64,000 bases of DNA from Ostrea edulis (taxonomy: Eukaryota). The notes beneath the pieces are model-generated. The model saw nothing but the letters and a program-made list of their open reading frames with translations, searched no databases and was not told the DNA's origin. Where the stretch lies: NCBI RefSeq assembly GCF_947568905.1, contig NC_079169.1:73966001-74030000 (forward strand), read 5' to 3'. Position numbers and translations under genes: made by a program. Shown one piece after another: positions 14,897-46,361 of this stretch. Each line of letters starts with the position of its first letter. Within the stretch, counting starts at the first letter, position 1.

Positions 14897-17345
14897 GATG
14901 CCCCCCTCCCCCTTTAGAAAGTGGTGCCATTGTGTGTCAGCACAACCAATCATCTTACATGTACAATCTTCTAAGTTTTTGTAGTTAGTACCTATGATGT
15001 CATTATCATTCCATTTTTCTCATACATAAGAGATTTGCAGGTCATCTAAATATTGGCCAATCAAAATTTAACGCAGGTGTTTGCGCGTGTGTAAGTGATT
15101 TTGACTATGCTACATAGAGAGTTTAAAATATATGTGTCACATAAATTTCGAAACATTTAATTGAAATCTCGAAATGTTATAGATCGATACCTGATGAAAG
15201 AAATTAAGAATTACAATGCACCATTCATTAAGTATTTGTATTGTAAACCCACAGCAAAAATATAACTTTACATCAGCCTTAAATTAGAAAATTATGGCCA
15301 ATTTGTTTCGGGAAGATAACAAAAATAATAACTAGACACGATCTCGTTTTGAACAACGAGGAGGTCTTCTGTTGGATTCTGTAATGCGATAGATGTAATA
15401 AAGATTACGATGATGGCCATTAACTTTGATCTACAATGCAAAGATATCTTTAGTTTCAGCAACAGAAAGAATAAAAATTTTGAACATAAGGCCCGTTTAG
15501 AATATTCATAACGTAATGGATCGTCATATTGGTGACGTCAGTAATCCAATATTGCCTAACCGTCATTTTCCTAGTATCAGAAGTTGCAAAAGAGATGTAA
15601 AGTTTTTATTTGTGTATAAACTGATATTGACAAAAATGTATACATTATGCAGTAAAAAAAATGGTGCTTTTTCTTAGCTTTACCGAGCAATTGATTACTA
15701 ATATTTTAAGCGTACTTTTAAAAGCATCACTATTTAGTACTATATGTAGATCAGGGAGTCTCCGTCGTCACCGTACACAATCGTACTTTTTCTCTGACAT
15801 AATTCAAAATGTTTGCAATGTTTTGTATTTACATATATGCATATTTTATGTTGTAGAATCACGTGTATGTGTGTGTGTCTTATGGTGTTTTTTCAAATAA
15901 CGGAAATTTTATCAAAATTGTTGCCATTGTCATAAAATATTTAAAAAAAATTACCGATGCATTGTCATCTGACCAGTACATATCATAGAAATGATTATAT
16001 GTCTCTGTATATTTTGATATCGGGTAATTGGTTAATTCCCATCAAAGATACACATTTCGTTTGTCGGGGTCCAGTTGGGGCCAGGCTGTCCTGTACTCGA
16101 TCTGCTTTCTGTTCCTTACATACCTATAACCTTTGCTATTTCCCCAAAACTGACAAGAGGTAATAACAGTATACATGCTATAAGAGGAGGCGGACAGGAT
16201 GAGAGGAAGGAGGTGCATGGAAGAGGAGAAAGAGGTTTAGTGGGGAGGTTCTTACACTTCTTTTCTTATAACTCCTTCGTTTTTCCTTTTTCACATCTAA
16301 TCTGCATCAACGGCTATACGTATTCGATGCCGTGCCCATTGTGTTTTAACAGATAAAAGAAACAATTAAAGAATACATTTGCAATATCACGTAAGCTTGT
16401 TATATCTATATGCATCATAATCGTTGCCGTGCATATGGGTAGTAAACTGGCATGTAATACGCTTTAGTACCCAAATGAAATATGCAATTCATCACTATTC
16501 AGGGATAGAGAGAGGGGGAGAGGACCACCCCCTGTACGCCCCCTGATATAAGGAGTCAAGTTCATGAGAAGGACCAACATCTTCATGGAACTTTACAATA
16601 TTTACGCTATGGAGTTGATGCGACTAGAAGTAGAAATCCTCGTCCGTAATGTCACTCAAATGACTGTCCAGTGTACACTGGTGACCGTGTTTCTATATAT
16701 TCTGATTCATTGTCCTTATTATAGAAACTTTTTCATAACTGTAGTCATCTACACCAATGTCTGACGGTGACCCAACGGACAACAAAACTGAGCCTGTATC
16801 GCTTTCAGCGCTATACTCCATGATTAAATTATGCGCTGTTTATGTTAGTCATGACAACGTAACAAGAAATGAAAATATTTAGACAAAACAACTTATTTGA
16901 CTTACTTGTACTGAAGTTATTTTTCTTTAAATTCTAACAGATTATTATTGCAAATAAACGGAAAAATCATAATCTAAACGCTAACATTTTTAAATGAGTA
17001 TACATACTTACATCTAGCACACACTGACAACTTGCTCGTAATGATTAACTTATAAAAATGTACATTTTAGTCCGTTCCATAGCCTACATCATATTTATTG
17101 CCTATTCATCTAATGAAAATATACATATATACCTTTTTTTTAATTCATGCATGCGAGACACTCAAATGTAAACAAAACTTTATTCTTCTAGATTATATAG
17201 TGCATGTACGTGAAAAGGATAGAGAAAAAAAACATAAATCGCGTGCGCTTTAGCCATTTTTCACACACATATACTTAGGCTGAATGCGGACATGTATGTG
17301 AAAAAGATAGAGAGAAAAAAACCCCCACAAATTCCGTGCGCATTA

Positions 17346-17529
17346 TACCACCTTCACACTCACGGATTTTTCTTACGAGTTCTTACGGATCTCCGACTCG
17401 TAGTCAATCACAAGCATTCGTAAATCACTCGTCGGTATCCATGTCTAAATCGTAACATTCCGTGTACTTTTATGGATTTGTGGAATACGTAAGAATCCGT
17501 AAGAAAAATCCGTGAATGTTAAGGTACTA
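17346..17529. mobile_element. PIF/Harbinger-like MITE (184 bp, TTA TSD) inside an ~88-bp tandem repeat
   Basis: TIRs taccaccttcacactcacggatttttcttacg / cgtaagaaaaatccgtgaatgttaaggtacta. TTA at 17343-17345 and 17530-17532. The neighbouring repeat unit shows the empty site (gcgctttagccat). Confidence 0.75.
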
Positions 17530-18139
17530 TTAGCCATTGTTCACACACGTATACCTAGGCTGAAGGCGGACACGCTTACATAGGGAAATAAATGTACATT
17601 TTATTTAGGTTGTAAAACAGTAGTTCTAATTCATAAAACAAAAACAAAAACCCAATCACAGATTTACCGTTATAAATTTGTTTAGTTTCTCCACGTAAAT
17701 ATAGTTATGTATCGTTATATAATCTATTTGCGCAATACACACGCACGCTAATGTCAAATGACGTTAAAATGCATTTTTATCGCGTTTAACTGTTAAAATG
17801 CATTACTTTCATGAAGAAATAGGTCTATGACACTTGCCCGTACCTAAATATGACCGTAAGAAAAAATGAAGCAAATGTTTCAACCTTTCCGAATATGATA
17901 TACGTTTTTAAATATTTTGTTTTTTAGAAAAGATTTCACTAACAGAATATGACACAAGTTTTGTCATTTCGGCTTAAATTTCCTACTTTCCGGTAACGAT
18001 GTGCGATTTTGAATGCATGTTTTCGACTAGTTCCCAACATCGCACAGAAAAATTTTGCGTAGGAAAATTGTTTAGTTTTTACTCTACTTTTAGAAAATAT
18101 GATTTGTTTCATTGTATTCCAATTATTAACAAAACGCCC

Positions 18140-18200
18140 CCAATTTAATCACGTCGGCACATAAAAGGCGTCAAAAGGCGTCACTGGGAGTTAAAGGGTT
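18140..18200. mobile_element. Isolated piggyBac-like terminus
   Basis: Reverse complement reads TTAA|CCCTTTAACTCCCAGTGACGCC. No matching second end found. Confidence 0.4.
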
Positions 18201-20301
18201 AAAGAAATTTGAATGCAATTCGGCACATCTATGAACTCAACTCTGAAAATTTCAATGTGATACCTGGAATAGTTTCCGAGAACACTCTTACGTAAAAAGC
18301 AACATATAATAAAAATCGAGAAAATACCTACCGAGTTCCTGAAATGTTCACGAAAATTGGCCCACGAAAATATCCGAGAAATCACATTTTAAAAAAAAAA
18401 CTTGTAAAGAAATTGTAGGAGTTATGAGATTGATCACTGTTCGTTATCTTCATCTTTCATATCATACAGAATAAAAACAAAATGTTAAAATCTTCGTTTG
18501 GGGAACTAATTACATATCTTATCTAGGCACTGGCACATTTTGAGGAATACACCGGGATATACTTGTAAGATATTATTGTGAACAATATAGATCTAGAGGG
18601 CATACTTAAAAATCAAACTGGAGTTTATATATAATGATATTGTATTTCCGACAAAGCGCAATGGAATGGAAAACTTTTTTTTAAAGGTTTTTTTTTTTTT
18701 TTTAATTTTTATTTATTTATGTATTTTGCTATGAAGAAGCAAGAAAATAAATAGCACAACAGAACAGTTTTTATTTCGTTAAATTAAATTGTGTCGGTGT
18801 GAGGCGGAGGAAGTTGCCCATGAGCCTTATAACCGCTTTTGAAAAAAAAATGAACGTAAACAGGAAATAAAAATCTCATGGGTTTCTGGAAAAAAGGGGT
18901 TAATGGTGAAGAAATTCAGCATTTTGACAGACGTGTTTGTAAACATAGATGAAAGGTGAAGATAACGAACAGTGATCAACCAAAAGTGATGTAATTCTTG
19001 ATTACTCTGACATATTTGAAAAATTCTTGACTCGTGAATGTGTAAATTTAAAGATTCCATATTTGATATCCATTAGTCATGATATCATAGGAATTACTTA
19101 GGCATTTTCCACGAAGTCTTCAAGCTGAGGCAACTACATGTATATGTAATAACAGTAAATAGGAACTTCCTTTTCCTTTCTAATCTGAAAATCACAAACG
19201 AAAATAAACACGTCCCGTGATTGCCAAAGGAAGGATTTACATAATCAATATGTCATACATGATGTAAAGTAGATCTAGATAGTTTCTAATTGATCACTGA
19301 TATAAATCCAGTGCAATGCGTATAAAGAAAACTAAAAATGTTTTACAAAAATAAAATTCTCAAGAATAATCTGTTCCTTTCATGAATACTTAAATTCGAT
19401 TTTTTTTCTTGTCAGAAACAAAATAATCGTATGCGGAGATATTCTGAATCAAATCAAGCACGCGATGTGTCCGATATGGGTAAGGGATGATTCCTTTCAT
19501 GTGTAGGATTGCACTTTCATAGGGATGAATTTTCGTGGTTTTGTATCAAATTTCGATTTCATTCGCAAAATGTTTCTTAAGTTTTTTTTGGTAATATATG
19601 GCATGGTTTAATTTTGCAGACAAATTAAATCCACCACAAGATGTATTGTGTTTACAGTCGTTCATTCTTTTATCAATTACAGTATAAATTATTGTAAATC
19701 TACATAAATTATTTCTAGCTTAAAATGATTAAAAATACAAATGTTTCTGCCTTTAAAACGTATAAAACATCATTCTATAATGTATAATGAACATGTTAAC
19801 CTCAATAAAATGGTGGTGGTGGTGGTGGGGGGGTATCCATGTCTTAGTTCAATCGCTAATGCTGTAGCCACTCAATTTCAATCTTTTATCACATGGTTTT
19901 GCGTCATGACTATTACACGTGATCTGTTCTGATACGGGGTTTCAAACTGTACATACGTTCCTGCGGAATTAACGTTTTCATGTCTGCGGAATTTACATGA
20001 ATTTATTTTGAAAAATATTTCGTAAATTAATGAAATACGTACTTTATTGGGATTTGAAGTTATTGTTGATACTAGTCTTCGAGTTATATTGTCTTTAGAA
20101 ATAAATCAACAATCTCTAGCAAGAGTTATCGTTCCTTACACACTTTTTTCGTCTTCGTGATTTACACTTGTAAGCTGTCTTGGTTACTGGGAGTACAAGA
20201 CCAACAGTCTGCTACAATAATTTATTACCAGACCGTTAACAGGCACTGTCCCTTGGTGCCCCCTGTAATCAAGTCTACAAAATCGTACTTTGAATTGTTT
20301 T

Positions 20302-20685
20302 CAGGGTGTTGCTAAAACGCAGAACGGAAAACAAGATGGAACGGAAAACGGAACAGAATTTAAGAATTAGAATGATAAATGTTGCTAAGATAACACCAAA
20401 AATCGGAAGACAATACTTTGTTATGATTAAAATCAAAATTTTGGGAATTTGTTTACAAGCAGTAATACAATTTCATCTTAAAATTCTTCATCATGAATTA
20501 AGAGAAGTTAAATGTTTTTGAATAAGAATTTACATTGCGTTTTACAAGAATGTCGACATTGACAGATGTGTTGGCGAGCAGCAACACTTTAGGGTAGAGA
20601 ATGGAAAGAACACACGTACTTTATATGCCCCCCCCCCCCCGTCCCCGGTGGCAAAATGTACATGTGATACTGTGTATGTGTATGG
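20302..20685 (+). mobile_element. Left part of the same hAT-like non-autonomous family as 48404-49622
   Basis: cagggtgttgctaaaacgc...gaatttaagaattagaatga...acacacg...poly-C...gtggcaaaa is colinear with 48403-48780. Confidence 0.7.
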
Positions 20686-21214
20686 CTCTAAATTCGCTCT
20701 TGAGCACATCTTGACCTACGATTTTAATAGGAGGAATAGAATGTAAATTATTAAACAAATTAAACAATAATTTATTACCAGACTGTTAACAGTCACTGTC
20801 CCTTGGTGCCTTCTGTAATCAAGTCAACAAATCGTACTTTCTTTAACTTTGTTCAACTGTTTTCAAAGTGTTGATAAAACGCGGAACGGAATTGAATTAA
20901 TTCCAAGTACACGATATATCTTAATTCATAACTGTTATGGAAGGATAACATTTACGTACTAGAGTGTGTTCATGCTCAAAATGTCACAAATTGAATAGAA
21001 ATTGATGTTTATTTCTCCTCATGTTTTAAACGTAACGTCTGTCAGCCACAACACATCGGGGACATTGATATAAAAAGAGGCACTGTTTACGCTAATTATT
21101 GTCTACTGATAGAAAAATTAAAACTTTATCAAAATATTGATCACAAATCCCCCCAAAAGTCCTGTAGGTTGAAATATTTACAAATCTTCGGAATGGTTGA
21201 CGTGTCTGTCAAAT

Positions 21215-21663
21215 GGAAAAACACCAGAATTGCCTAGCTACAGGGCGCCGCCATTGTGGACACCCAAAGTTGTGCGGAGAAGAAAAGTTGACAGGAGATC
21301 TGATTGGTCATTAACAGAAAATCTTTGTGATGGAATTTAATAGTGAAATATAAGTGATAAAAATGACAGGTGACATAACAGAATATGTAGAAAGATACAG
21401 AAGTTATAAGGGAAGATCTGAGTGGAGAGGTGATATTTGGATGGACAATTTCATTCAGTGCGGATCTACACTAGTTGTTAACAGGCCAAAATTTGAAGGA
21501 AAAACGCAACGGCAAGCCATATATTTTTGGGTGGAATTTTGAAGGGGAGATGATGAACTTTGCTGAATGGTGACTGATTTTTTGAAAATTGGCTTAATAA
21601 ATAATTGACAGTGATTGGAATTTGTATGGAAGTCTATGTGAAAACATTTGGTGGTGTTTGTCC
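21215..21663 (+). repeat. Left long terminal direct repeat (449 bp) with 12-bp TIRs
   Basis: Starts GGAAAAACACCA and ends TGGTGTTTGTCC (reverse complement GGACAAACACCA). Flanked by AAAT and TATA. Confidence 0.97.
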
Positions 21664-21748
21664 TATACTGAGGTAGCGAGAACCAGTTTATGAGGTAAGT
21701 GTAAGAAAGTAGTGCATTTTTAGCGCCATTTGTCAGTTTTACAATAAA

Positions 21749-22066
21749 ATGGATGCATTTTTTGATAATTTGAAAGAAAAAGTAAATCGTAGAAGTGTAC
21801 GGGGCCCCCAAGGGGGCACCTGCATCATTTGGAGGGGTAGGATTTCCCCCTCTGGCTATGGGCTACAAACTGTCTACTGGCCAGAGGAGGGAAGAAAAGT
21901 GGAAAAGGCCCACAGAGTTGCCCTTATGGCAGAGTGGAAACTGACTCGGAGTCTGTTTCCACGTGACAATGTAGAATGTAGCCACCTCTGCCATACCAAG
22001 CTGTGTGTGAACCCCCAGCATTTGGTAGTGGAGTCCCACTCTATCAACCAGGAGAGGATTCACTGA
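21749..22066 (+). CDS. His-Me finger (homing-endonuclease-like) nuclease, probably truncated by a premature TGA
   Basis: CIIWRG...GYG...AHRVA...CSHLCHTKLCVNPQHLVVESHSINQERIH*, continuing in frame as QLQGVCSKSHMPWCIL. Confidence 0.85.
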   Translation: MDAFFDNLKEKVNRRSVRGPQGGTCIIWRGRISPSGYGLQTVYWPEEGRKVEKAHRVALMAEWKLTRSLFPRDNVECSHLCHTKLCVNPQHLVVESHSINQERIH

Positions 22067-22148
22067 CAGTTGCAGGGGGTGTGCAGCAAGTCACACATGC
22101 CCTGGTGCATTTTATGTAATTATATGTATTTTACATGTAAATTTCATT

Positions 22149-22731
22149 TCATTTAGCATATTTAGATGGTGGTTTTGAATAGCTGTGCTCAATTTTTTTG
22201 CATAATTTCTGCTCTTTTGATGATTTTGAAAGCATCATATTTTTTCTATAGTTTACTTCTTCCTGATGTTGTTCATAAAGTTTATTAATATCAACTAATT
22301 TCTTACATCTTTTTTTCATATCAGACTTGTTTAAGGTGATTACTTTTTGCATAATGGTGTTGCTTGTTTTTTGTAGAGAAGACTCGGCTGGAGGTGGGGT
22401 GTTGGTTGACATGAGGATTTTACGAAGAGAAGAACTGCCAATGGGGGTTTGACTGAGACCTATTTGTAGGCCATAGTTTATTGCTGCTGCTTTCCTTCCC
22501 CTGGAACCGGATTCTACTTCGACATAGAGGCTATACATTTTGGACACGTAGGTGCAGGTGTTACATTTAAGCCGTAACCTAGTGCCCAGGTCACGCCTCT
22601 CTTCAGAGTCCAAGTCCCAGGTTAGGTCACCATCACAGCCTGGATTGGCCCGCCCATGTTCTTTGAACTCTGCGTTGAACATGCCACATGTCTTTTCCAG
22701 ATGCAGCAGTCTGTAGGAGTCATTTTCACAC
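22149..22731 (-). CDS. KolobokP transposase exon 2 (N-terminal Cys-containing region; DDE core missing)
   Basis: Acceptor ttcggcag|G, phase matches exon 1. CENDSYRLLHLEKTCGMFNAEFKEH...C.G.L.WD...LKCNTC...GRKAAAINYGLQIGL...; no catalytic region follows. Confidence 0.75.
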
Positions 22732-23102
22732 CTGCCGAAATCAGTTATGTACCTGATTACTTCCTAACCAGGCAAGTTCATTTTCAGAAATTAGAGTTAC
22801 TTCCCTTTGACTATACTTGTTCTCAAAGTTGAGTCAAGAGGCTCATCACAGTCCCTAACAACTGTTTTTTGTAACTTTCTCTTCATATGAATGAACAATT
22901 ATTGTAATGTTGCTATAATTTAGAGAGTTTATTAATTATAAAATTAATTAAGCTAATTAAATTTACAGGATCTTAGGGATACCCCTTATTTCAACCAATT
23001 TGGCCATATGTGGGCCTATTCTGAGAATTAGAAAAAAATATTTTCTACTCAAAGAGGTTTTGTTTCATAATTTAAGAAAGTTAGAGGAATTGTAATCGTT
23101 AC

Positions 23103-23368
23103 CCTGAGGATTCAGCCTGATTTAAAGTCTCATGGTTTCCTTCCTTTTTCAGGGGTCTTGGCCGAAGCAGTCGGTGGCACCCAGGCCTGAGCATCATTTC
23201 CTGCTCCTCGCACAGAGAGGGTGGATGCGTCACCAGTTGTAGGGTTTCCCTGTCAACTCTCGTGAATGGTGCAGGTGAGTTTTCTTTTTTTTCATGTAAT
23301 TTCCCCTTGTTGTGAGGCACATATTTTGGCTTAAAACCATAATTATTCCCTTTTTTGAATTTTCCCAT
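23103..23368 (-). CDS. KolobokP transposase exon 1
   Basis: MGKFKKGNNYGF...LLRPRP...ESSG, donor GG|gtaac (phase 2). Splices to 22731 to give a 282-aa ORF. Confidence 0.65.
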
Positions 23369-24063
23369 CTTTGAAAACTGACATATAATTCTGCTAGGAA
23401 TATTCTGTCTGAAGTAAAATTCACTTGTGATGTGCTTTTTCCAGTGCTCTATCAGCATCATGTCAAGTTTAAGTGATATTGTGTAATAATTTATTATCAT
23501 GATAGGAATTAGCAAGCAACCCTCACTGCAAAATGTATCTGAGTTAAAGAGGGTAGTGACAGTTTTACTGTTACAGAGAAACAACACTACTAGATCAGAT
23601 TACCCCTCATATGTTTTAATAACCTTCTATTAATTGGCTGTCAGCAGCTTAGTGAATTCATTCTGAATTGGAAAAGTAAATGCATTTTGAAAGCATTTTT
23701 CCTTGATAAATTAAGATTTTTTGGCCATTTTTTCAAAAACCGGGTAGAATGTACCCTGAATATGTAAATTACATGTGAATCCTCACATCCTCTTGAAAAC
23801 ATAAAAAATAAGACAATAAGACTGTTATTTACATTTTTTACTTCAATAAGCACTGTAAAAAGTCATTATAAAGTTGACATTCAACACAGCTTCATATCAC
23901 AGTTGAGTTCATCATGTGTGAGGGGTTACATTATATAGATAGTCATAATTTACATGTTTTTTCATGTAATTTTTTCATGTTACATATTTTACATGTACTA
24001 TGTGCATGTTATCTAAAAATGTCAAATTGGCCACTTTTTCACTTTGTTTTCCATTTGGTTATA

Positions 24064-24512
24064 GGAAAAACACCAGAATTGCCTAGCTACAGGGCGCCGC
24101 CATTGTGGACACCCAAAGTTGTGCGGAGAAGAAAAGTTGACAGGAGATCTGATTGGTCATTAACAGAAAATCTTTGTGATGGAATTTAATAGTGAAATAT
24201 AAGTGATAAAAATGACAGGTGACATAACAGAATATGTAGAAAGATACAGAAGCTATAAGGGAAGATCTGAGTGGAGAGGTGATATTTGGATGGACAATTT
24301 CATTCAGTGCGGATCTACACTAGTTGTTAACAGGCCAAAATTTGAAGGAAAAACGCAACGGCAAGCCATATATTTTTGGGTGGAATTTTGAAGGGGAGAT
24401 GATGAACTTTGCTGAATGGTGACTGATTTTTTGAAAATTGGCTTAATAAATAATTGACAGTGATTGGAATTTGTATGGAAGTCTATGTGAAAACATTTGG
24501 TGGTGTTTGTCC
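24064..24512 (+). repeat. Right long terminal direct repeat (449 bp)
   Basis: Identical to the left repeat except one substitution seen (agttat versus agctat). Flanked by TATA and AAAT. Confidence 0.97.
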
Positions 24513-25375
24513 AAATGAACTGGGTGTTACGTGCTATTTATAGAGTTTATCTCTGATACTAAGTGCGTCTACATGTGACCTGGAGGTTATAAATAATTTT
24601 ATTTTCCCTCAGTGTTCTCTGCATCTGTATTGACCTTCCGATTGTTAGCGCCCCAGATAGAAACCGAAGAGCCGTGAATTACTGTCTGTTCATGTGTGAC
24701 GTTCATCTGGTAAGTTACGTGCATAACAATTTTGACACAAATATCATATCAGTATGAACAACGAAAGGATTAATTTGGAATTTTTATAAATGTATGAATT
24801 TGTACACCTGTTTTCCTTGCAGAATAAGTTTACTAGATTGTATAATTGTGTGAATAACACAAGGACTGACGGACATTGCATCTAAATCATCGTAACAGTG
24901 ACAGACATGACGACGTTTGTTCATGTTACATAAATTTCAAAGCTGCATTCAGATTTAAAAAGTTTTATTAATTTAACAAATAAGTGTATATATTGAAGAT
25001 ATCAATGCATTATATTGCAGTGTTTGTCCTTTTTTTATATACACAAAAGAGAACTATACAATTAATTCTGGGCATGTTATAATAATTTAGCGTTGATAAA
25101 AATTTATGTCAAATCATTTAATTCTATAGAGAATTTTATATTGATAGGCCTTGTGAAATTCTAATTTATTTAGATGATATTAATATTGTTCATGGACATA
25201 AGAATTTGAATAGTAAGGTTTATAAAGGCAGCTGAAAAATATGAAAAAGACTGACCAAACAGCTATTGCTTAGATTGTAACAATGACAGACATTACCATG
25301 ATGACATTGTCTTCGTATGTTATACGGCATAAAAAGAAATCCTGATTTAAAGAAATTTCATAGTTTAAAAAGCCC

Positions 25376-25602: not shown

Positions 25603-27942
25603 CCTCAGCTGAAAGTTCAGGAGAGCTTTTCTGATCGCCTGTTGTCCGTCTGGCCGTCTGTCTGTAAACTTTTTACATTTTGACTTCTACTCCAGAACCA
25701 CTGGGCCAATTATAACCAAACTTGGCCAAAAGCAGCCTTGGGTGAAGGGCTTTCAAGTTTGTTCAAATGAAGGGTCATGCCCTTTCAAAGGGAATCACGA
25801 AAATGCAAAAATAGGGTGGGGTTTAAAAATCTTCTTCTCAAGAACTACTAGCCAAGAAGAGCTGAAATTTAAATGAAAGTTTCCTGACACAATGCAGATT
25901 CGAGTTTGAACAAATCATGACCTCCGAAGGTAGGATGGGGCCACAATAGAGGATCAAAGATTTACATACAAATATATAGGGGAACTCTTTAAAGATCTTC
26001 TTCTCAAGAACCACTAGACCAGAAGAGTTGAAATTTACATGACAGCTTCCTGACATAGTGGAAATTCAAATTTCTTAAAATCATGGCACCCGGGGGTAGG
26101 TTAGGGCCACAATAGGAGATCAAGGATTTACATACAAATATATAGAAAAAAATCTTTAAAATCTTCTATTCAAGAACCACTGAGCCAGAAAAGCTGATAT
26201 TACCATGAAGCTTTCTGACATAGTGCAAATCGAAGTTTGTTATAATCATGGCCCCCGGGGGTAGAATGGGGCCACAAGAGGGGATCAAAGTTTTACATAC
26301 AAATATATAGGGAAAATGTTTAACAATCTTCTTCTCAAGAGCTACTGGACCAGGAAAGTAGAACTTTACAGGAAATCTTCCTGACATAGTGCAGACTCAA
26401 GGTTGTTAAAATCATGGTCCCTGGGGGTAATATGGGGCCACAACAGGGGATCAAAGTTTTACATACAAATGTATAGGAGGAATTTTTATAAATCGTCTTC
26501 TCAAGAACCACTGAGCCAGAAAGGTTGAGATTTACAAGAAAGCTTCCTGGCATAATGTAGATTCAAGTTTGTTAAACTCATGACCCCTGAGGCTAGGATG
26601 GGGCCACACTATGGGATCAAATTTTTACATATTGATAAATAGATAAAAATCTTTTTCGTAAGAACCATTTGGCCAAAGAAGTTTACATTTGCACGAAAGC
26701 TTTCTGAAATAGTGCAGATTCAATTTTGTAAAAATCATGGTTCCCGGGGGTAAGATGGAGCCACAGTAGGGGATCAACGTTTTACATACAAATATATAGA
26801 AAAAAATCCTTTAAAAATCTTCTGATGAAGAATCACTGGGAGAATTATAACTAAATTTGGCCAATAGTGTCCTTGGGTAAAGGGCGTTCAAGTTTGTTCA
26901 AATGAAGGGCCATGCCCCCTTGAAAGGGGAGATAATTACAAAAATTCAAAAATAGGGTGGGGTCATTTAAAATCTTCTCAAGAACCACTGAGCCAGAAGA
27001 GCTGAAATTTACATGAGAACTTTCTGACATACTGCAGATTCAAGTTTGTTCAAATCATGATCATGGCCCCGGGAGGCAGGATGGGACCACAATAGGGTTC
27101 ATAGTTTTAAAATATATAGGGAAAATCTTTAAAACTCTTCTTCTCAAGAACCATTGGGCCATAGAAGTTTACATTTGGATGAACGTTTCCTTACATAGTG
27201 CAGATTTAAGTTTGTAATAGGGATCAAAATTTTATATGCGAATATATAGTGTAGTGTTATATACACGAATTATTCTAGGAATGACTCGGTTTTTTGTGTA
27301 AGAGTTATGCCCCATTTTTCTACTCTTTATTTACAAAGTTTTGCACTGAGCCCGTGCACACCGCACAGTTTCTACCTTGTACAAGCGTACACCTTTTCCA
27401 GTGATGTAATCCCACAGTGGAAGTATTTTTTTGTGTTTTCTTATGTTTAAATTCTTTTTATGTACATGTTACATTTGCAGTCAATATCTATACAAAAGTT
27501 CATGTAAATTATTTAGACCTTTGGCGGGAAAACTGTTCGTGCTATGTTTCACCCATGCATAAACTAAACTTTCAAAGTAAGATTTATTAGGTAGTCATAT
27601 TCAGTTCTTTATTTATGTCATACATTTTTATTATCTTGCGTAATTTCTCGTTGTAAATCATAAATGATTTAGGTGTATTTTTTTGTCAACTGTGTGTTAT
27701 TAAGCAAGTGATACTTAGTCATAATTCAGTCAGTCATATTTATTATATTGAATTATTCATTGTTACACCATTATGTCATGTGTAATGTCTACATTTTCCG
27801 AATTGTAGTAGTTTTACTAATAGCGTACCAATAAAGAATTAACTGAACCACCATGGCTAGTGATCAGTACATATAGGGAAAATCTTTGAATATAGGCCAA
27901 GGTGACTCAAGTGAACGATGTGGCCCATGACCGTCTTGTTGA
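25603..27942. mobile_element. HINE element carrying a ~166-bp Cg170-like satellite array, with an internal restart near 26820 and a solo LTR insertion
   Basis: Left hairpin tttagctcacctcagctgaaagttcaggagagct plus a (GTCY)n-like tract. Monomers recur about every 166 bp (25831, 25996, 26163, 26328, 26496, 26655). The 5' unique part reappears at ~26828. Terminal box at 27877-27942. Confidence 0.85.
27250..27871. mobile_element. Solo LTR, unit B copy (622 bp)
   Basis: TG...CA with TATAG TSD at 27245-27249 and 27872-27876. Confidence 0.85.
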
Positions 27943-27999
27943 CAAAATGTATACTCAAAGAATGCAAATTAGCATTAACAATTGTAATTCAAAACATCT

Positions 28000-29647
28000 G
28001 AATTTTATAATCCATTCAGCTTAAATTTAGAGAAATTAATGATATACATCAACCTGTAACACACACACCACCCCCACCCACATAATGGTTCTTATAGTTG
28101 CATAATTACATGAATAAATATATATCATTATTTTTTTTTTATTTGGTATTCGGTTTTTGTCACATGCATACATGTACATATACTACCCTCTCACACTGAT
28201 TCATTCATCCTTTAATAGTTATTAAATCTAGGAATCCAAAAAACAAACACATGTGAAAAGTAGCTAGTAAAAAAAAATCAGTCAAAAATAATCTGATATA
28301 ATTTTAATATATATTATTTTTTATGCATGCATGCTGATATGTACATAGCTTGCAGGGCAATAAACACTTTTCACCACTTTCATCTTCTTTTTGTGTGATT
28401 CTATTGTTTTTTAATTCAATGATTTGTGGATAAACATTGTGTTGTAGCACAGATTTTAAAAATCCCTACATTAACACACACCCCCCCCCCCCCCCCCAGA
28501 TTGATTTAATGTTTTTTTTTTACTGTGGAGATTTATCATTTCAATCATTATTATTTTAAAAAGAATCATTTCATCAAATGAATTGTTTGCATTGACACAT
28601 CATGAGAACTTCCATCAAAATTGTCTAGCAATCAAACACAGTTTTCAAAAAAAAATAACAGAGAAAATTCGACATTTTTACTTACCACTTCCAACGGGAA
28701 CAAATATTTCCCTTGAAACATTGAAGTTTACTGCTCTGTCTGCTTTACACTTTCCTTTGTGTAGTAGATAACAACATTTGGTGGTGGTTGCCTCCAGTAA
28801 ATCCCCAAAGAATCGCAATGACCTCGGCATACTAGTAAGCATCTGCACCGTGCACGATAGTTTAAACAGTTAAACTTTTACGTCGAATTCGAAGTACCCC
28901 GATCTGTACAGCAGGGGGTCAATCTCGGTTGAATATTACACGCAGTTCCAACTTTAAAATATCTTGAATATCCACTTATGTCTTTTGAACAATTATTAAG
29001 GGTTGACAAGTCCCTAAAATAAGGACCACTCCTAGAAAAACTTCACCTTTCTATCATTTGTCAGCCATATCTGTTTACCCACGAAACTTATATAAGGTCC
29101 GGGCTGAATATTTATTTTTCACCATCAAATTAAAAAAAAAATTAATTCCACGTTTACACTTGATAAAAAAATCGAGATAAGTGAAAAATGTTCTAAATAA
29201 ATACTGTTTCTTCGAAAATTACAATTTATGCAAGTTTCGGATCATTTTACATTTTTTACGCCAAGGGAGGTAACTCAAATTACTGGCTTTTTGGCTACTT
29301 CTGTCAGTAAATGCTCAACAACAGCATTGTTTCCCAGCAATTTTATTGTTTCATCTTAATTATTAAGGAATTTCCTTCAAATATTGTTTATACTTTCTGG
29401 ACAAATTTTATTGTATTGGGTATTATTTAACTTTACAAAATGATCATTTTCTATAGATTATATAGTGTCCTCGAATTTATGAAATAGGCCAAGTTTTGGC
29501 ATCTAACAATGTTTTTTGTGAAATTCACTTTACATACGATAAAATTGGCGTATGACCTTAACTTTTATTGGGTATGAATAAAATTTTGGGGAATTGCATG
29601 TGCCAGCTGTATTATAGCTACTGCCTGATATCTCCGTGGACGGCCTC
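28000..29647. mobile_element. Unit-B-specific 1.65-kb insertion at a TTAA site with one Kolobok/Sola3-like end
   Basis: Unit A empty site aaacatcTTAAaaagaacc. The right end reads TTAA|GAGGCCGTCC on the minus strand. No matching left TIR. Confidence 0.55.
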
Positions 29648-30949
29648 TTAAAAAGAACCTGTGACTTAATATAGGTAATTGCACTTATATAAAAACTGCA
29701 ACACTTTGGAAGATGTGCATGGTCATAATACTATTCCATGAAGCTTATATTTAATGTAATCATGATAAAAGATGTAGATTTGTTAAAATGTCATATCAAA
29801 TTACATTTACATGAAAATCAGATGAATGGATAAGAATTTGTAAAGACCATGAAAATACTTAATAAACAGAACGTGTTACCTTACAGCAATAAGAAACATG
29901 CGAGGCCACACACATCCGAAAGTAAACTTAAAAATTAATTATGCTGAGAGAATGAGAAAATACAAAGAGAGTTGGAATGAAGATAAAAAAAAAAACCCAG
30001 AAAAACAGAGAGAAAACTAGAGAGAGAATGAGATCTTATCGAGAGAGGAAAAAAGATCAAGAAGCAAGGTCCAGTCAGAATACTGTCAGAATGACTCGTG
30101 AAGGATTTAAAAAGGAAGAAGAAAGGAAAACGAGAAATGCTGAATATAGAAGGAAATACAGAAAAGACGAATACGTGAAAAATATGTGTTAAGAAAGAAA
30201 ATGAAAAGAGAGGAGAGAAAAAGAAATCTGAGATCAAAGTATGCACATTGTCAGCAAAACGAAGTACAGAACCCAGCACATCAAGTGTGTCGTCAACTCC
30301 ATATAAAACTAGTGCTCTAAAGAAAGCAGTCTATAGGATTAAGGGGAAATTACCAAAATCTCCTAGAAAATTTGCTGAAATAGTTAAAGGACTCGTGGAA
30401 AAAGCTTCAATTCATAAAAAAAAGAGGTTTTGGCAGAAAAGGGTTTAATGGTCAACAAAAGATACACAGATGCCATCAGGGAAGTTGATCAAAGTTTAAG
30501 AGGAAGAGCAAATTAGTTAGAACATTAAGAAAGTCATTTATAAGTAGTTTAGTAAAAACATAAAAAAGTACATTTATGGAACAATCCAAAACGTCAGCAC
30601 TGAGTTAGGCATTCACAAAAATTTCTTAAGTTCAGGATGCCTGAAAGAAGACAGGAAGAGAAAAGAGTGTTTGGATGAGACAATAGAAAAATCTGTTAAA
30701 ACATTCTTCCAACAGGATCAGGTTTCAACTAATTTGCCAAATAAGAAGTTATTCAAGAAAGACAGTGATGAAAGTAGAGTGTTGCTGGGTACACTCAACA
30801 CGACTTATAAGATGTGAAAGGAAGCTAACCCACATCAGAAGATTTTACTTGACAAGTTCTCTAAACTGGAGCATAAAGAGGTTAAAACCCAAAAGTAAAG
30901 GAATTTTTTACAATGTCTATGTGAATATTGTGTGAGAATGCCAATTTGA

Positions 30950-34271: not shown

Positions 34272-35726
34272 TACAAGAGGCCCATGGGCCTAGAATCGCT
34301 CTTCTGATACATTGTAGAACAGGCAAAACTTCTCACTAACCAATATTCATCAATTAAGAAAGTTTGATGATGTTAAGTCAAATAGTACCTGAAAATTTAA
34401 ATGTAACTGTCCAAAAGTAGATCACGGTGACCTACTTTTGGTCGACACACTGAAGACTCAAGATGCATCAACTGACAAGTCAAATAGTATTCAAATATAG
34501 CCGTCAAATTCCAAAAGGCCACAGTGACCTACTTTTTGGTCGAGACACTCCAAAGACCTAAGATGCATCAACTGACAAAGTTTGATAATTGAAGTCAAAT
34601 AGTATCTGAAATATTCTGATATGAACGTCAAACTCCAAAAGTAGGTCACAATGACCTACTTTATGGTCGACACACACCGAAGACTCAAGACCCATCAACT
34701 GACGAAGTTTGATGATTGTAAGTCAAATACTATTTGAAATACACAAATATAGCCGTCAAAATCCAAAAGTAGGTCAAGGTGACCTACTTTTTGGTCAATA
34801 AACTATGAAGGCTCAAGATGCATCAACTGACAAAGTTTGATGATCCTAGCTTTCATAGTGTCCAAAATATGCATCTAAAATTGAAAATGTGAAATTTGAA
34901 TGTCTGCAAAATTCAAAAAGTAGGTCACTGTGACCTTACTTTTTTTGATAAATATGTTTCGAGGCCTCTAGACGCATCATCTTACAAGGTTTGATGATTC
35001 TAAACCTCTCAGTATCTGAAATAACAACCTAAAATGTATTCATAAATAATTAATAACCATAAAATTCAGAAAGTAGGTCATGGTGACATACTTTTCACAT
35101 AACGCACTTTAAGGTCCCATGATCCATCAACTGACAACTTTTGATGACCATAGGCTCAAAAGTGTCCAAGATATGCATCAAAATCCATTTAATAATAATT
35201 ACCTGCGAAATTCAAAAAGTAGGTCACCATGTCCTACTTCTGAGACAACATGATATTAGGTCCTAAGATGCATCAACTGACAATTTTGATGATCGTAGTC
35301 CTTATACTAAGCAAAATATCAAAGTTTTAACAAAACAAAATTTAAGGTCAAATTTGAAGTGACCTTGAGACCACACCCTTTGCCCCAGGATGATGCCTTG
35401 AACAATTTTTTTTTAATTTACAACCTATCCTCATCCTTATGCATAAGTTTGGTGATAATTTGCCCAGTGGTTCTTGAGAAGAATTTTTAGCAACCCCTAC
35501 TTTTTTTGCATTTTCCTAATTATCTCCCCTTGTTAAAGGGTCACAACCCTAGTTTTAGTACAAATGAAAGCCCTTGGGCCAAGAACACCCTGTGACAAAT
35601 TTGACGAAAATTGGCCAAGGGGTTCTTGAGATATAGCCCTTTTTCCAAAAAGTTGGTGCACACCGCACGCCAGACATATGACCATATGATTAGCTCTTTG
35701 AGCCTTCGGCTTACAAGAGCTAAAAA
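34272..35726. mobile_element. HINE-type element with palindromic satellite, unit B (7 repeats)
   Basis: Same ends as 5423-6979, lacking one ~103-bp repeat. Confidence 0.8.
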
Positions 35727-36034
35727 TACATATCAGATCATTCTTCTTTCTTTTTATATGCAGAATAATTAAGTAAAAAAAATCATAAGGGTATAAATCT
35801 TGCATGGCAAAAAAAAAAAATACATCCCATAGAAATTTGTCAATGGAGCTGTCACACATTTGTCGGATATGAAGAACACAATGACCTTAATCAGTGGTGC
35901 AGAATCGCACACCACATTATAGATAGTATACATGTCGGGGTTTCTGTTAAGTTACATTAGACATGACATGTCTTTATTTGACCTGCCTGTCACGTTACAA
36001 GATTTGTTTGTGTTTATTATGTTATGGGAGTTGT

Positions 36035-37300
36035 CTGTCATGTTACATTATACGTCTGTCATTTTAAAGTATTTGGCTTTCATGTTACGTTACATGTCTG
36101 TCCATGTTACGGTATACGTCTGTCATGTTACAGTATACGTCTGTCATGTTATGGTATATGTCTGTCATGTTACGGTATACGTCTGTCATGTTACGGTATA
36201 CGTCTGTCATGTTACAGTATATGTCTATCATGTTACAGTATATGTCTGTCATGTTACGGTATATGTCTGTCATGTTACGGTATACGTCTGTCATGTTACA
36301 GTATACGTCTGTCATGTTACGGTATATGTCTTTCATGTTACGGTATACGTCTGTCCATGTTATGGTATACGTCTGTCATGTTACAGTATATGTCTGTCAT
36401 GTTACGGTATATGTCTGTCATGTTACGGTATATGTCTGTCATGTTACGTTATCTGTCTGTCATGTTATTGTATATATCTGTCCATGTTACGGTATATGTC
36501 TTTCATGTTACGGTATATGTCTGTCATGTTACGGTATATGTCTGTCATGTTACGGTATATGTCTGTCATGTTACGGTATATAACTGTCATGTTTCGGTAT
36601 ATGTCTGTCATGTTACGGTATATGTCTGTCATGTTACGGTATATGTCTGTCATGTTACGGTATATGTATGTCATGTTACGTTATATGTCTGTCCATGTTA
36701 CGGTATATGTCTGTCCATGTTACGTTAGATGTCTGTCATGTAACGTTATCTGTCTGTCATGTCACGGTATATGTCTGTCCATGTTACGGTATCTGTCTGT
36801 CCATGTTACGTTATCTGTCTGTCCATGTTACGGTATATGGTCTGTCCATGTTACGTTATATGTCTGTCATGTAACGTTTTCTGTCTGTCATGTTACGTTA
36901 TATGTCTGTCATGTTACGGTATATGTCTGTCCATGTTACGTTATATGTCTGTCATGTTAAGGTATATGTCTGTCCATGTTACGTTATATGTCTGTCATGT
37001 AACGTTTTCTGTCTGTCATGTAACGTTATCTGTCTGTCATGTTACGGTATATGTCTGTCCATGTTACGTTATATGTCTGTCATGTTACGTTATCTGTCTG
37101 TCATGTTACGGTATATGTCTGTCATATGATACGGTATATGTCTGTCCATGTTACATTATATGTCTGTCATGTTACGGTACATGTATATGTCTATCATTTT
37201 ACAGTATTTGACTTTCATGTTACGTTATATGTCTGTCATGTTACGGTATATGTCTGTCATGTTACGTTATTTGTCTGTCATGTTACGTTATCTCTCCGTG
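36035..37300. repeat. 21/22-bp minisatellite, unit B, roughly 60 units
   Basis: Direct reading. Confidence 0.98.
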
Positions 37301-39492: not shown

Positions 39493-39648
39493 NNNNNNNN
39501 NNNNNNNNNNNNNNNNNNNNNNNNNNNNNNNNNNNNNNNNNNNNNNNNNNNNNNNNNNNNNNNNNNNNNNNNNNNNNNNNNNNNNNNNNNNNNNNNNNNN
39601 NNNNNNNNNNNNNNNNNNNNNNNNNNNNNNNNNNNNNNNNNNNNNNNN
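39493..39648. other. Assembly gap (156 N) at the position homologous to the unit A gap
   Basis: N run with the same flanks as 11441-11573. Confidence 1.
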
Positions 39649-42453: not shown

Positions 42454-44469
42454 GGTGGAAATGTCTTATTTTGATACGCAATTCAGTTTATATACCCGAC
42501 CAATATTTACAAATCCGTTTATAAGATTTTTCGACCCAGATATTTCTGAATTTTTAGCTCACCCGTGCCATAACATAATTCATCTAGTTCTGATTGTAAC
42601 GGGGACCGTTACACATTTCCCCCAAATGTCCCCCATTTGCAAAGTGCAGCCAATTTGTTTGACATTTTGTTTGAGTCGTTCAATATACACTTTAATTAAT
42701 AATAGCATAACTTTCACTTTATTTCTATGAGTTATGTAAACTAAAGTATATTCAATCAAAATGAACTAAACGTACATACACTTGCTGGTCAGCAATTTTG
42801 ACCATGTCAATTCCGTTAAGCGTCTCAATAGATATATACAGTATCATTTTCAAACTAATTCCTTAAAAAAGCAGGAATATTTTAGACGTTTGAGCATTAT
42901 CCAATCAAAATGAAAGGGGCGGACATGTGTGTTGTTAACTACGATATATATTTAAAACGATTTCATGGGAAAATAAACACTTTACACCGATTCCAAAGTT
43001 CCTGTGCCAAAATTTGATGCACGTACATGCATATGCACACATGTTCAGAGAAATAGCATCCGTTTTGCACATCTACAAATGATATACTATCATCCTAAAA
43101 AGGTTTCAACCTTCTGTAGATTTTTTAGAACACTTCTGGAGAAAAAAGTTCAGGAGAAACACAATAAAGAGAAGAAGAGGAAGAGTAAAAACACTTCGTT
43201 TGGGGAACAGAACTAGTTCTAATTGTACCGGGGACCGTTACCGATGCCCCCCCCCACCCCCCTTTAGAAAGTGGTGCCATTGTGTCTTACCACAACCAAT
43301 CATCTTACATTTAATTCTTCTAAGTTTTTGTAGTTAGTACCTATGATGTCAGTATCATTCCATTTTTCTCATTCACGAGAGATTTACAGGTCATCTAAAT
43401 ATTAGCCAATCAAAATTTAACGCCGGTGTTTGTGCGTGTGTAAGTGATTTTGACTATGCTACATAGAGAGTCCAAAATATGTGTGCCACATAATTTTCGA
43501 AACATTTAATTGAAATCTTGAAATATTAATAGATCCATACCTGATGAAAGAAGTTAAAAATTACAATGTATCATTCATTAGGTATTTGTATTGTAAACCC
43601 ACAGCAAAAATATCACTTTATATCAGTCTTAAATTAGAAAATTATGGCCAATTTGTTTGGGGAAGATAACAAAAATAATAACTAGACACGATCTCGTTTT
43701 GAACAACGAGAAGGTCTTCTGTTTGTTTCTGTGATGCGATAGATGCAATAAAGATTACGATTATGACCATTAACTTTGATCTACAATGCAAAAATATCTT
43801 TAGTTTCAGCAACAGAAAGAATAAAAATTTCGAACATAAGGCCCGTTTAGAACATTCTTTACGTATTGGATTGTCATGTTGATGACGACAGTAATCCGTT
43901 ATTGCCTAACCGTCATTTTCTAATACCAGTAGTTGCAGAACGTCAGAAAGCACAAATTAGCATCAATACTGCTCCACAAATTCTTTATAAATTTTGAATT
44001 ATTATGGAAATATTATTGACATCACATAGCTCCATATCTGAGGGGGTGCTCCCTAAAACTTGATATTGTCGTATCGGTCTTGTCATACTTTGTTCTAAAA
44101 CGTCTAACATACTATATTTCAGTTTCGAGATAATTGGGATATTCATATTTATGTTCTGACCCCAGAATTCCTTAAAGAGATTGCAAGCTTATATATTTTT
44201 GAGAATAAAATTCTGCGCAATTGTTGTCTATAATGCTTTCCAAAATATTTCTCATTGAAGAGATGTAAAGTTTTTCGTACTTTAGTACTTTAAGCAAATG
44301 TCAAAACGAACGACTTTACTTCAATAAAGCTGCTTCATTAATTCGTTAAATTTTTTGAGATATTTAAAAATACTTTATCATATGAGAGATAACCTTATTA
44401 GAAACGAAGTCCTGAGTTATAGTAGGCGTTGGCACGATAAGAACCCTCATGCTACGATCATGAGCAAAA

Positions 44470-44605
44470 TATAGGGCTCACGGCGGGTGTGACCGGTGGA
44501 CAGGGGATGTTTATTCCTCCTAGGCACTTGATCCCTCCTCTGGTATATCCAAGGGTTATGAGAGGAGTTATGAGATTGATTACTGTTCGATATTTTCACC
44601 TTTCA
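44470..44605 (+). mobile_element. Isolated Penelope/Naiad-type 3' end
   Basis: atagggctcacggcgggtgtgaccgg...gagttatgagattgattactgttcg. Confidence 0.75.

Positions 44606-46326: not shown

Positions 46327-46361
<35 letters not shown>

What the first reader, a model, noticed from the sequence alone, without database searches (positions are those of the whole stretch)
21215..24512. Young, structurally complete KolobokP-type composite transposon: a DNA transposon built like an LTR element
Seen: two 449-bp direct repeats differing at one position by eye, each with its own 12-bp TIR (GGAmAAACACCA), an outer AAAT TSD, and TATA at both repeat/internal junctions. Each repeat therefore looks like a self-contained mini-transposon bracketed by 4-bp AT words. 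Known: this matches the described KolobokP lineage of bivalves (LTDRs near 450 or 660 bp, DDD/E transposase plus His-Me finger nuclease), so the lineage is not new, but this family or copy may be uncatalogued. Inference: near-identical repeats with damaged internal genes mean recent mobilisation in trans. It is absent from unit B, where the region is deleted.
Basis: partly seen in the sequence, partly recalled or inferred. Interest (0 to 1): 0.8.

Follow-up and report, generated by a model that had tools for sequence, protein, structure and literature searches.

The report
Non-autonomous KolobokP DNA transposon copy
This is a real, cleanly bounded copy of a KolobokP DNA transposon, a kind described in 2022 mainly from bivalves, but its transposase gene has lost its catalytic core, so it is an ordinary non-autonomous member of a known lineage.

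Summary
Two 449-bp direct repeats (21215-21663, 24064-24512) differ at one base. Each starts GG and ends CC with an 11/12 12-bp inverted repeat. AAAT flanks the whole element, and TATA sits at both inner junctions.

The 2400-bp internal region carries two convergent genes:
- A His-Cys box nuclease gene (PF05551, I-PpoI-like) on the plus strand, with one premature stop.
- A transposase gene on the minus strand. Its first exon is intact. Its main exon has one large in-frame deletion of about 1.15-1.2 kb that removes the catalytic part.

Four related families from public assemblies show the same layout at full size: LTDR, TATA, nuclease, convergent 563-724-aa transposase. Every structural criterion of Kojima & Bao 2022 (PMC9587614) is met.

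It is not an LTR retrotransposon: there is no RT, no TG..CA ends and no PBS or PPT.

- 'Structurally complete' applies only to the ends.
- Identity between the repeats is not an insertion clock for a DNA transposon.

Mobilisation in trans is plausible but unproven, because the host genome was not available.

The family's termini and conserved blocks are absent from the 2022 catalogue text. Its repeat ends are homologous to the Crassostrea gigas KolobokP-N7/-10 families.

Verdict: new member of a known kind, low to moderate interest.

The parts
21211..21214 (.). Left target-site duplication AAAT
   Evidence: Identical 4 bases at 24513-24516; bases further out differ.
21215..21663 (+). Left long terminal direct repeat (LTDR), 449 bp, with its own 12-bp terminal inverted repeats (21215-21226 and 21652-21663), termini GG...CC
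   Evidence: Non-coding: no Pfam hit for its ORFs and no 3-base periodicity of substitutions against relatives. Identity is 65% to the L001 repeat and 54% to the L010 repeat, with conserved blocks. The last 68 bp are 97% identical to L002.
21664..24063 (.). Internal region (INT), 2400 bp, begins and ends with TATA (21664-21667, 24060-24063)
   Evidence: Relatives L001 and L010 have TATA on both sides of their repeat. [quoted passage not shown]
21749..22156 (+). His-Me finger (His-Cys box) nuclease gene, 135 codons, broken by one premature stop; catalytic motif residues present
   Evidence: PF05551 E=2.8e-12. 13 relatives of 94-181 aa, best 83% identical. The profile hits I-PpoI chains at E=3e-4. 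dN/dS against L002 is 0.16. The frame read-through is shown. It shares words with KolobokP_9_CGi in the paper's nuclease alignment.
22149..23368 (-). Transposase gene remnant. First exon intact (about 23105-23368). An intron-like spacer sits at the position shared with relatives. The main exon carries one large in-frame internal deletion that removes the catalytic part.
   Evidence: The 177-aa ORF hits PF20700 at E=6e-24, profile positions 11-145 of 357 only. 653 relatives by phmmer, full-length ones 650-750 aa. tblastn of 53 full-length relatives covers only about their first 255 residues, and of L010/L004 proteins also the last few dozen, in one frame with no stops. Relatives have an 89-aa ORF plus a 563-613-aa ORF about 435 nt apart.
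23742..23756 (.). Conserved 15-bp semi-palindrome GGGTA-N5-TACCC in the non-coding stretch upstream of the transposase gene
   Evidence: It is the only match in the window, with 0.02 expected. There is exactly one match in each relative locus that covers this part, 371-376 nt upstream of the transposase ATG. It is absent from the more distant L017/L018. Function unknown.
24064..24512 (+). Right LTDR, 449 bp, one base different from the left one
24513..24516 (.). Right target-site duplication AAAT

Best explanation
The stretch 21215-24512 is one monomeric LTDR-INT-LTDR copy of a KolobokP-lineage (Kolobok superfamily) DNA transposon. It lies in the opposite orientation to the published convention: the transposase is on the minus strand and the nuclease on the plus strand.

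Shown: two 449-bp direct repeats, each with its own short inverted ends; a 4-bp target duplication; and two convergent genes homologous to the transposase and the I-PpoI-like nuclease that travel together in full-length relatives.

Shown: this copy cannot supply its own enzyme. The transposase gene has one large in-frame deletion that removes the catalytic part, and the nuclease gene has one premature stop.

Inferred: a Kolobok-type DDD/E transposase recognised the outermost inverted ends (left end of the left repeat, right end of the right repeat). It integrated the whole unit at a staggered 4-bp cut in AAAT. If the deletion predates this insertion, the enzyme came from another, autonomous copy.

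Inferred from Kojima & Bao 2022: each repeat can also behave as a small non-autonomous transposon, and the nuclease may promote repeat-to-repeat recombination that yields multimers and solo repeats.
For: - Anatomy.
- Nuclease: PF05551; relatives; I-PpoI by profile; purifying selection along the lineage, dN/dS 0.16.
- Transposase remnant: PF20700; 653 relatives; coverage limited to the N-terminal third plus a short tail.
- Relatives have the same gene order. The nuclease is followed convergently by a 563-724-aa PF20700 protein in L004-L012 and on the contig that encodes P0024.
- Relatives have the same repeat layout, TATA|GG..CC|TATA.
- LTDR+INT units of 3993-4036 bp in relatives against 2849 bp here give a deletion of about 1.15-1.2 kb.
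- The published definition is met on every structural point: LTDR about 450 bp, TIR 11-18 bp, RR..YY ends, TSD 3-5 bp, convergent transposase and nuclease.
- The repeat end of L010, and less closely ours, is homologous to the start of KolobokP-N7_CGi-LTDR printed (compare).
Against: - The catalytic DDD/E region cannot be inspected in this copy because it is missing.
- Pfam labels the transposase family 'Mutator-like' (PF20700), not Kolobok. I could not place the remnant in the published Kolobok tree, because no reference alignment was usable by reference. Peptide words from the remnant were not found in the noisy supplement text.
- No second copy of this family was available: exact look-ups of three ORFs were blank and the best nuclease relative is 83% identical. 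Copy number, sharing of the deletion and an autonomous partner are therefore all untested.
- Unit B gives no empty site.
Confidence: 0.85

Rival explanations
1. Same element, different history. It inserted as a full-length autonomous KolobokP copy using its own transposase, and the internal deletion and the nuclease stop arose afterwards in place. No mobilisation in trans would then be needed.
For: There are only two lesions in about 400 retained codons. No other copy with the same deletion was found in public protein collections. Repeat identity does not date the insertion, as left and right repeats of unequal length in Table S1 show.
Against: Internally deleted KolobokP families that have multiplied are common in the published survey. 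Examples are 39 of 50 KolobokP-1_MeMe monomers sharing one deletion, and many N families of 1.6-3.7 kb. The blank searches mostly reflect that the host genome is not in the collections.
Confidence: 0.35
2. An LTR retrotransposon or a non-autonomous derivative (TRIM/LARD-like) whose direct repeats are true LTRs.
For: Direct terminal repeats of a few hundred bp and a 4-bp duplication are also seen in LTR elements.
Against: No RT, integrase, gag or protease signal appears in any ORF of the element. The repeat ends are GG..CC with 12-bp inverted repeats, not TG..CA. No TGG-initiated primer-binding site follows either repeat, and no purine tract precedes either repeat, on either strand (reading). 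There is no tRNA or Rfam match. The internal genes are a DDE-type transposase and a homing-type nuclease.
Confidence: 0.01
3. A chance composite: two independent insertions of a 449-bp MITE-like solo repeat that happen to bracket an unrelated fragment with transposon genes.
For: Each repeat has its own inverted ends, and the paper argues that solo repeats move on their own.
Against: The outer flanks form one matching AAAT pair, while the flanks of each single repeat do not match. The same INT, with the same TATA junctions, gene order and spacing, adjoins the repeat in four other families.
Confidence: 0.03
4. An assembly artefact: a single repeat plus INT from a tandem or circular graph, wrongly unrolled into repeat-INT-repeat.
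For: Relatives assemble from short reads as cycles of one repeat plus one INT, with terminal overlaps of 141 or 55 bases. This shows how easily such units confuse assemblers.
Against: The two repeats differ at one base and are joined to different unique flanks with a matching 4-bp duplication. No gap (N run) lies near; the nearest are at 11441-11573 and 39493-39648.
Confidence: 0.02

Closest known systems
KolobokP families of Kojima & Bao 2022 (PMC9587614), in particular the about 449-bp-LTDR group of Crassostrea gigas (KolobokP-8/-9/-10/-N7_CGi)
   Same: LTDR length of 449 bp; 4-bp duplication; GG..CC ends with short inverted repeats; INT bounded by TATA; transposase and His-Cys box nuclease convergent. 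The nuclease shares conserved words with KolobokP_9_CGi. The repeat end is homologous to the KolobokP-N7_CGi repeat start. The overall size, 3298 bp, is close to the non-autonomous KolobokP-N7_CGi at 3261 bp.
   Different: The sequence is different. None of the tested 11-15-base words from its termini and conserved blocks is in the published consensus file. The inverted repeat is 12 bp with one mismatch, against 17 bp listed for those families. The host species is unknown.
Unnamed relatives in public assemblies: L002/L003 (ENA metagenome contigs), L001 (SPKZ01020850.1 of GCA_004566355.1), the L004-L009 family and the L010-L012 family
   Same: The same repeat, junctions, gene order and spacing. 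L002 is 84% identical over the repeat end plus the nuclease gene, and 97% identical over the last 68 bp of the repeat. L001 is about 70% identical.
   Different: These carry the full-length main transposase exon (563-613 aa) and an uninterrupted nuclease gene. The window's copy has the deletion and the stop.
I-PpoI and other His-Cys box homing endonucleases of nuclear group I introns
   Same: The catalytic His-Me finger motif aligns: S-H, the following Cys/His ligands, His, Glu and Asn.
   Different: The gene is not in an intron. It is carried by a transposon, its target is unknown, and this copy is truncated by a stop before the C-terminal zinc-binding residues.
Bacterial composite transposons and IS26-type pseudo-compound transposons
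   Same: Two copies of a self-contained element with its own inverted ends bracket a central segment, and either the whole or one end can move.
   Different: Here the flanking repeats are non-coding and the transposase lies in the central segment. The architecture is inherited over long evolutionary distances rather than formed ad hoc.
LTR retrotransposons and TRIMs
   Same: Direct terminal repeats, and the solo-repeat and tandem forms reported for the lineage.
   Different: No reverse transcription machinery, PBS, PPT or TG..CA ends. Repeat identity is not reset at each insertion.

Membership tests
KolobokP (Kolobok superfamily) | Two long terminal direct repeats of about 450 or about 660 bp | tested here: met
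   449 bp each, 448/449 identical. Definition.
KolobokP (Kolobok superfamily) | Each LTDR has its own short (11-18 bp) perfect or imperfect TIR, with termini 5'-RR...YY-3' | tested here: met
   12 bp, 11/12 complementary, GG...CC.
KolobokP (Kolobok superfamily) | Target-site duplication of 3-5 bp around the whole unit | tested here: met
   AAAT on both sides. Only one copy was available.
KolobokP (Kolobok superfamily) | INT encodes a Kolobok DDD/E transposase | tested here: inconclusive
   A remnant homologous to 650-750-aa transposases is present, but the catalytic part is deleted. Pfam names the family Mutator-like (PF20700). Full-length relatives in the same architecture match the whole PF20700 profile.
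KolobokP (Kolobok superfamily) | [quoted passage not shown] | tested here: met
   PF05551; I-PpoI by profile. The genes are convergent and their 3' ends overlap by 8 bp. One premature stop.
KolobokP (Kolobok superfamily) | Transposase falls inside the KolobokP clade of the Kolobok tree | not tested
   The published alignments could not be used by reference, and word look-ups in the supplement text were blank.
LTR retrotransposon | Reverse transcriptase/integrase/gag between the repeats (or in autonomous partners with the same repeats) | tested here: not met
   No such Pfam hit in the element's ORFs. Relatives carry only the transposase and nuclease.
LTR retrotransposon | LTR ends TG...CA, a PBS next to the 5' LTR and a PPT next to the 3' LTR | tested here: not met
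   Ends are GG...CC. Both junctions read TATA followed by non-PBS, non-purine-tract sequence on both strands. No tRNA-like or Rfam signal.
MULE / Mutator superfamily (because of the Pfam name) | Target duplication of about 8-11 bp and long terminal inverted repeats (my knowledge of the superfamily) | tested here: not met
   4-bp duplication and 12-bp inverted repeats inside direct repeats.
Bacterial-type composite transposon | Transposase encoded within the flanking insertion sequences | tested here: not met
   The repeats have no Pfam hit and no coding periodicity. The transposase gene is in INT.

The most novel reading that the evidence does not exclude
The non-coding parts of this element may be functional modules that the 2022 description did not resolve.

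1. The whole repeat, and above all its INT-proximal 70 bp, is far better conserved than synonymous sites. It is 97% identical to L002 where pS is 0.39, and 65% identical to L001 where synonymous sites are saturated.
2. Because of the inverted ends, both junctions read 'repeat end + TATA' facing inward. The nuclease ATG lies a conserved 74-85 nt inside one junction and the transposase ATG a conserved 693-695 nt inside the other. The repeats could therefore act as inward-facing promoters, much as LTRs do.
3. A 15-bp semi-palindrome GGGTA-N5-TACCC is held at a fixed position upstream of the transposase gene in four families. It could be the binding site of a dimeric regulator or the still unknown recognition site of the His-Cys box nuclease.

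Separately, the in-frame deleted transposase (N-terminal third plus tail, still open) could encode a truncated DNA-binding protein that damps transposition.
Probability: 0.15. Interest if true: 0.55.

Novelty: new member of a known kind. Interest (0 to 1): 0.3.

Why it matters
KolobokP is an unusual lineage: a eukaryotic cut-and-paste transposon shaped like a composite or LTR element, carrying a homing-type nuclease whose role was still unconfirmed in 2026. One more copy adds little by itself.

Its value is as a clean, well-bounded example of a family that seems absent from the 2022 catalogue. Comparison with four relatives also shows that the repeats and a short palindrome in the internal region are under constraint. 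That narrows where to look for the binding and cleavage sites the published model leaves open.

For annotation, the practical lesson is that such elements are easily misfiled as LTR retrotransposons, and that 'LTR-style' dating does not apply to them.

Tried and rejected
- Exact-sequence look-ups of three ORFs of the element (nuclease ORF, 177-aa transposase ORF, 62-aa repeat ORF) in public assemblies were all blank. The host genome is evidently not in that collection.
- One metagenome scan with a 28-base degenerate pattern of the repeat end returned only the contig already held. A viral-contig scan with the nuclease alignment returned nothing.
- Literature look-ups for GCA_004566355, SPKZ00000000 and PF20700 were blank. 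Neither the host of L001 nor the Pfam-to-Kolobok correspondence could be named.
- Word look-ups of 23 DNA words and 12 peptide words in the paper's supplements were blank, except for the nuclease words and the palindrome. The PDF text is visibly noisy, so these negatives are soft.
- An empty site in paralogous unit B does not exist there: about 4.6 kb is missing.
- The repeat is not coding: no Pfam hit and no 3-base periodicity.
- The 695-nt stretch upstream of the transposase ATG shows no single conserved frame.
- No RNA genes or tRNA-derived origin was found: only sub-threshold Rfam hits and no tRNA.
- The palindrome is not universal. It is absent from the intronless family L017/L018.
The pieces were searched apart.
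- I did not use the two remaining word-index protein searches, because the family scans had settled both proteins.

- While thinking about the neighbouring satellite at 25.6-27.2 kb, I wrote out in my reasoning, from memory, a stretch of a bivalve repeat.
- While working I located the two lesions for myself. One script printed alignment ends, one of which coincides with the deletion junction. Those places are not repeated in this report.
Full report
**1. Observation**

- The repeats 21215-21663 and 24064-24512 are each 449 bp and differ at one position.
- Each begins GG and ends CC. The first 12 bases match the reverse complement of the last 12 at 11 of 12 positions.
- The four bases outside the element are AAAT on both sides (21211-21214, 24513-24516).
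- The 2400-bp internal region (INT, 21664-24063) begins and ends with TATA.
- The bases next to each repeat differ between the two copies, so the repeat length is exact.
- No other copy or solo repeat lies in the window.
- The only N runs are at 11441-11573 and 39493-39648, far from the element. I left them untouched.

**2. What INT carries: the nuclease gene**

- On the plus strand, 85 nt inside the left junction, starts a 135-codon gene for a His-Me finger nuclease (21749-22156).
- Its first 105 codons hit Pfam PF05551 at E=2.8e-12.
- The word-index search found 13 relatives of 94-181 aa, the best 83% identical.
- A profile of them hits I-PpoI in the PDB at E=3e-4 across the catalytic motif.
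- The residues that align to the catalytic Ser-His, the zinc ligands, His, Glu and Asn of I-PpoI are all present.
- The gene has one premature stop. Downstream, the same frame still reads the conserved C-terminal motif of relatives.
- Between this copy and L002, dN/dS is 0.16. The gene was therefore under selection along the lineage, and the stop is a late lesion.
- In the paper's nuclease alignment, the words HRVALM and SHLCH sit in KolobokP_9_CGi in a context that closely resembles this protein.

**3. What INT carries: the transposase gene**

- The gene lies on the minus strand, converging on the nuclease gene. The 3' ends overlap by 8 bp.
- A 177-aa ORF (22149-22682) hits PF20700 at E=6e-24, but only profile positions 11-145 of 357.
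- An exhaustive phmmer search found 653 relatives. The full-length ones are 650-750 aa and match the ORF with about their residues 100-255.
- tblastn of 53 full-length relatives against the element covers only their first quarter to third.
- The main-exon proteins of L010 and L004 match with two pieces in one frame, without stops, covering the beginning and the very end.
- I read this as a single large in-frame deletion that removes the catalytic part.
- Upstream, at about 23105-23368, lies an intact counterpart of an 89-aa ORF. In relatives that ORF precedes the main ORF by about 435 nt, and it corresponds to the N-terminus of the full-length proteins. That amounts to a first exon and an intron shared with relatives.
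- I searched the pieces apart and did not join them.
- Break count: transposase, one deletion; nuclease, one stop; nothing else detected.

**4. Relatives and architecture**

Contigs that encode the nuclease relatives show the same plan:
- The nuclease is followed convergently by a 563-613-aa PF20700 protein, with the 89-aa ORF further upstream (L004-L012). The contig that encodes P0024 has a 724-aa single ORF followed by a 143-aa PF05551 protein.
- L001 (SPKZ01020850.1) is an INT-LTDR-INT piece about 70% identical to the window's element.
- An alignment of the repeats shows TATA|GG...CC|TATA in L001 and L010 as well, with several conserved internal blocks.
- Several of these contigs have identical ends of 141 or 55 bases. 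They assemble as cycles of one repeat plus one INT, 3993-4036 bp long. The corresponding unit here is 2849 bp, so about 1.15-1.2 kb is missing.
- With the second repeat, the relatives would measure about 4.45 kb, inside the published range for autonomous families.

**5. Comparison with the literature**

Kojima & Bao 2022 (PMC9587614) define KolobokP by the following features:
- LTDRs of about 450 or about 660 bp;
- each LTDR with TIRs of 11-18 bp and RR...YY ends;
- TSDs of 3-5 bp;
- frequent solo repeats and multimers.

They also note an INT bounded by TATA in KolobokP-1_MeMe, and internally deleted derivatives that have multiplied.

Every structural criterion is met here. The catalytic criterion cannot be read in this copy.

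Pfam's name for the transposase family (Mutator-like) differs from the authors' classification. The 4-bp duplication and the short inverted repeats do not fit a MULE. I treat the Pfam name as a label, not a contradiction, but I could not run the phylogenetic placement.

As of 2026 the role of the nuclease is still a model.

**6. Is the family catalogued?**

- None of 23 DNA words of 11-15 bases from the termini and the best conserved blocks, in either orientation, occurs in the consensus file of the paper.
- The start of KolobokP-N7_CGi-LTDR printed is nearly identical to the reverse complement of the L010 repeat end, and about 63% identical to ours by my count.
- The element therefore belongs to the 448-449-bp-repeat group known from Crassostrea gigas but is not one of the listed families.
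- This negative is soft. The supplement text is a noisy PDF extraction, and later Repbase or Dfam entries could not be checked.
- The host species remains unknown.

**7. Mechanism and what is inferred**

Shown:
- the ends, the duplication and the two gene remnants;
- their homology to a conserved two-gene transposon;
- the loss of the catalytic region.

Inferred:
- integration by a Kolobok-type transposase acting on the outermost inverted ends, with a 4-bp stagger;
- supply of that enzyme by another copy, if the deletion came first.

The rival history is insertion as an autonomous copy followed by decay in place. I cannot exclude it and give it about one third.

In an LTR element the two repeats are made identical at each cycle. 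Here they are simply carried along, and published families have left and right repeats of unequal length. What does speak for a fairly young copy is the perfect duplication and only two lesions in about 400 retained codons.

**8. Rivals rejected**

- LTR retroelement: no RT or gag, GG..CC rather than TG..CA ends, no PBS or PPT, and no tRNA or Rfam signal.
- Chance composite of two solo repeats: the outer flanks pair while the single-repeat flanks do not, and the same INT adjoins the repeat in other families.
- Assembly artefact: the repeats differ by one base and have distinct flanks. Only long reads could close this fully.

**9. Extra observations on constraint**

- The repeat is non-coding, yet it keeps 65% identity to L001, where synonymous sites of the nuclease gene are saturated (pS 0.78).
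- Its last 68 bp are 97% identical to L002, where pS is 0.39.
- The nuclease ATG lies 74-85 nt inside the junction TATA in three families. The transposase ATG lies 693-695 nt inside the other junction.
- A semi-palindrome GGGTA-N5-TACCC occurs once in the window, at 23742-23756, with 0.02 expected by chance.
- It also occurs once in every relative locus that covers that part, at a fixed distance from the ATG. At least one published consensus carries it. The intronless family L017/L018 lacks it.
- The paper's text mentions neither a promoter nor this motif.
- These are leads for the unknown binding or cleavage sites, not findings.

**10. Context**

- The element lies in unit A of a roughly 29-kb duplicated stretch. 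For example, 15215-21113 matches 43565-45832 and 25694-30512 matches 45845-47397, at 78-94% identity.
- Unit B lacks about 4.6 kb that includes the element, so it does not provide an empty site.

**11. Slips**

- I also located the two lesions while working. One script printed alignment ends that include the deletion junction. I do not repeat those places.

**12. Verdict**

This is a genuine, cleanly bounded, non-autonomous copy of a KolobokP transposon. It is a new member of a known kind. Interest is about 0.3.

Noticed in passing
window 23742-23756; L001 1359-1373; L004 3869-3883; L010 903-917: A 15-bp semi-palindrome GGGTA-N5-TACCC is conserved at a fixed position (about 371-376 nt upstream of the transposase ATG) in four KolobokP families. 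It is unique in the 64-kb window, present in at least one published consensus, and absent from the intronless family L017/L018.
   Followed up: partly
L004, L005, L007, L008, L010: Full-length relatives assemble from independent metagenome samples as cycles of one repeat plus one INT (3993-4036 bp), with terminal overlaps of 141 or 55 bases. This is expected from collapsed repeats or tandem multimers, and it cannot distinguish these from true circles.
   Followed up: partly
window 1-1630 vs 27231-30512; 15215-21113 vs 43565-45832; 25694-30512 vs 45845-47397: A large duplicated stretch (about 29 kb period) with 78-97% identity and many length differences between the units. The two N runs (11441-11573, 39493-39648) lie 28052 bp apart, at roughly corresponding places of the two units.
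   Followed up: partly
window 25822-26838 (also 45844-46314, 6712-6884, 35460-35630): An array of about 6 copies of a 166-bp unit (76% matches) just downstream of the element, with related monomers elsewhere in the window. It looks like a satellite-bearing repeat and was not classified.
   Followed up: no
window 7295-9240 and 36032-37291: Long arrays (92 and 59 copies) of a 21-bp unit. They create spurious ORFs of 400-570 aa in all three plus-strand frames.
   Followed up: no
window 51311-54032 (+), flanked by arrays at 47782-48141, 49704-50143, 55356-55720, 56212-56501: ORFs with reverse transcriptase (PF00078), RT thumb, and weak tyrosine-recombinase-like N-terminal hits suggest a DIRS-like retroelement. 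On both sides lie arrays of a 21-bp unit containing the palindrome AGAGATATCTCT.
   Followed up: no
window 62496-63870 (-): Adjacent ORFs with a tyrosine recombinase domain (PF00589, E=1.4e-8) and a weak GDSL/SGNH hydrolase hit. This may be another tyrosine-recombinase element (DIRS/Ngaro- or Crypton-like) running towards the window end.
   Followed up: no
P0090 (1835 aa): One database protein is a cadherin-repeat protein with a complete PF20700 transposase domain in its middle. It is probably a gene model that swallowed a KolobokP-like insertion.
   Followed up: no
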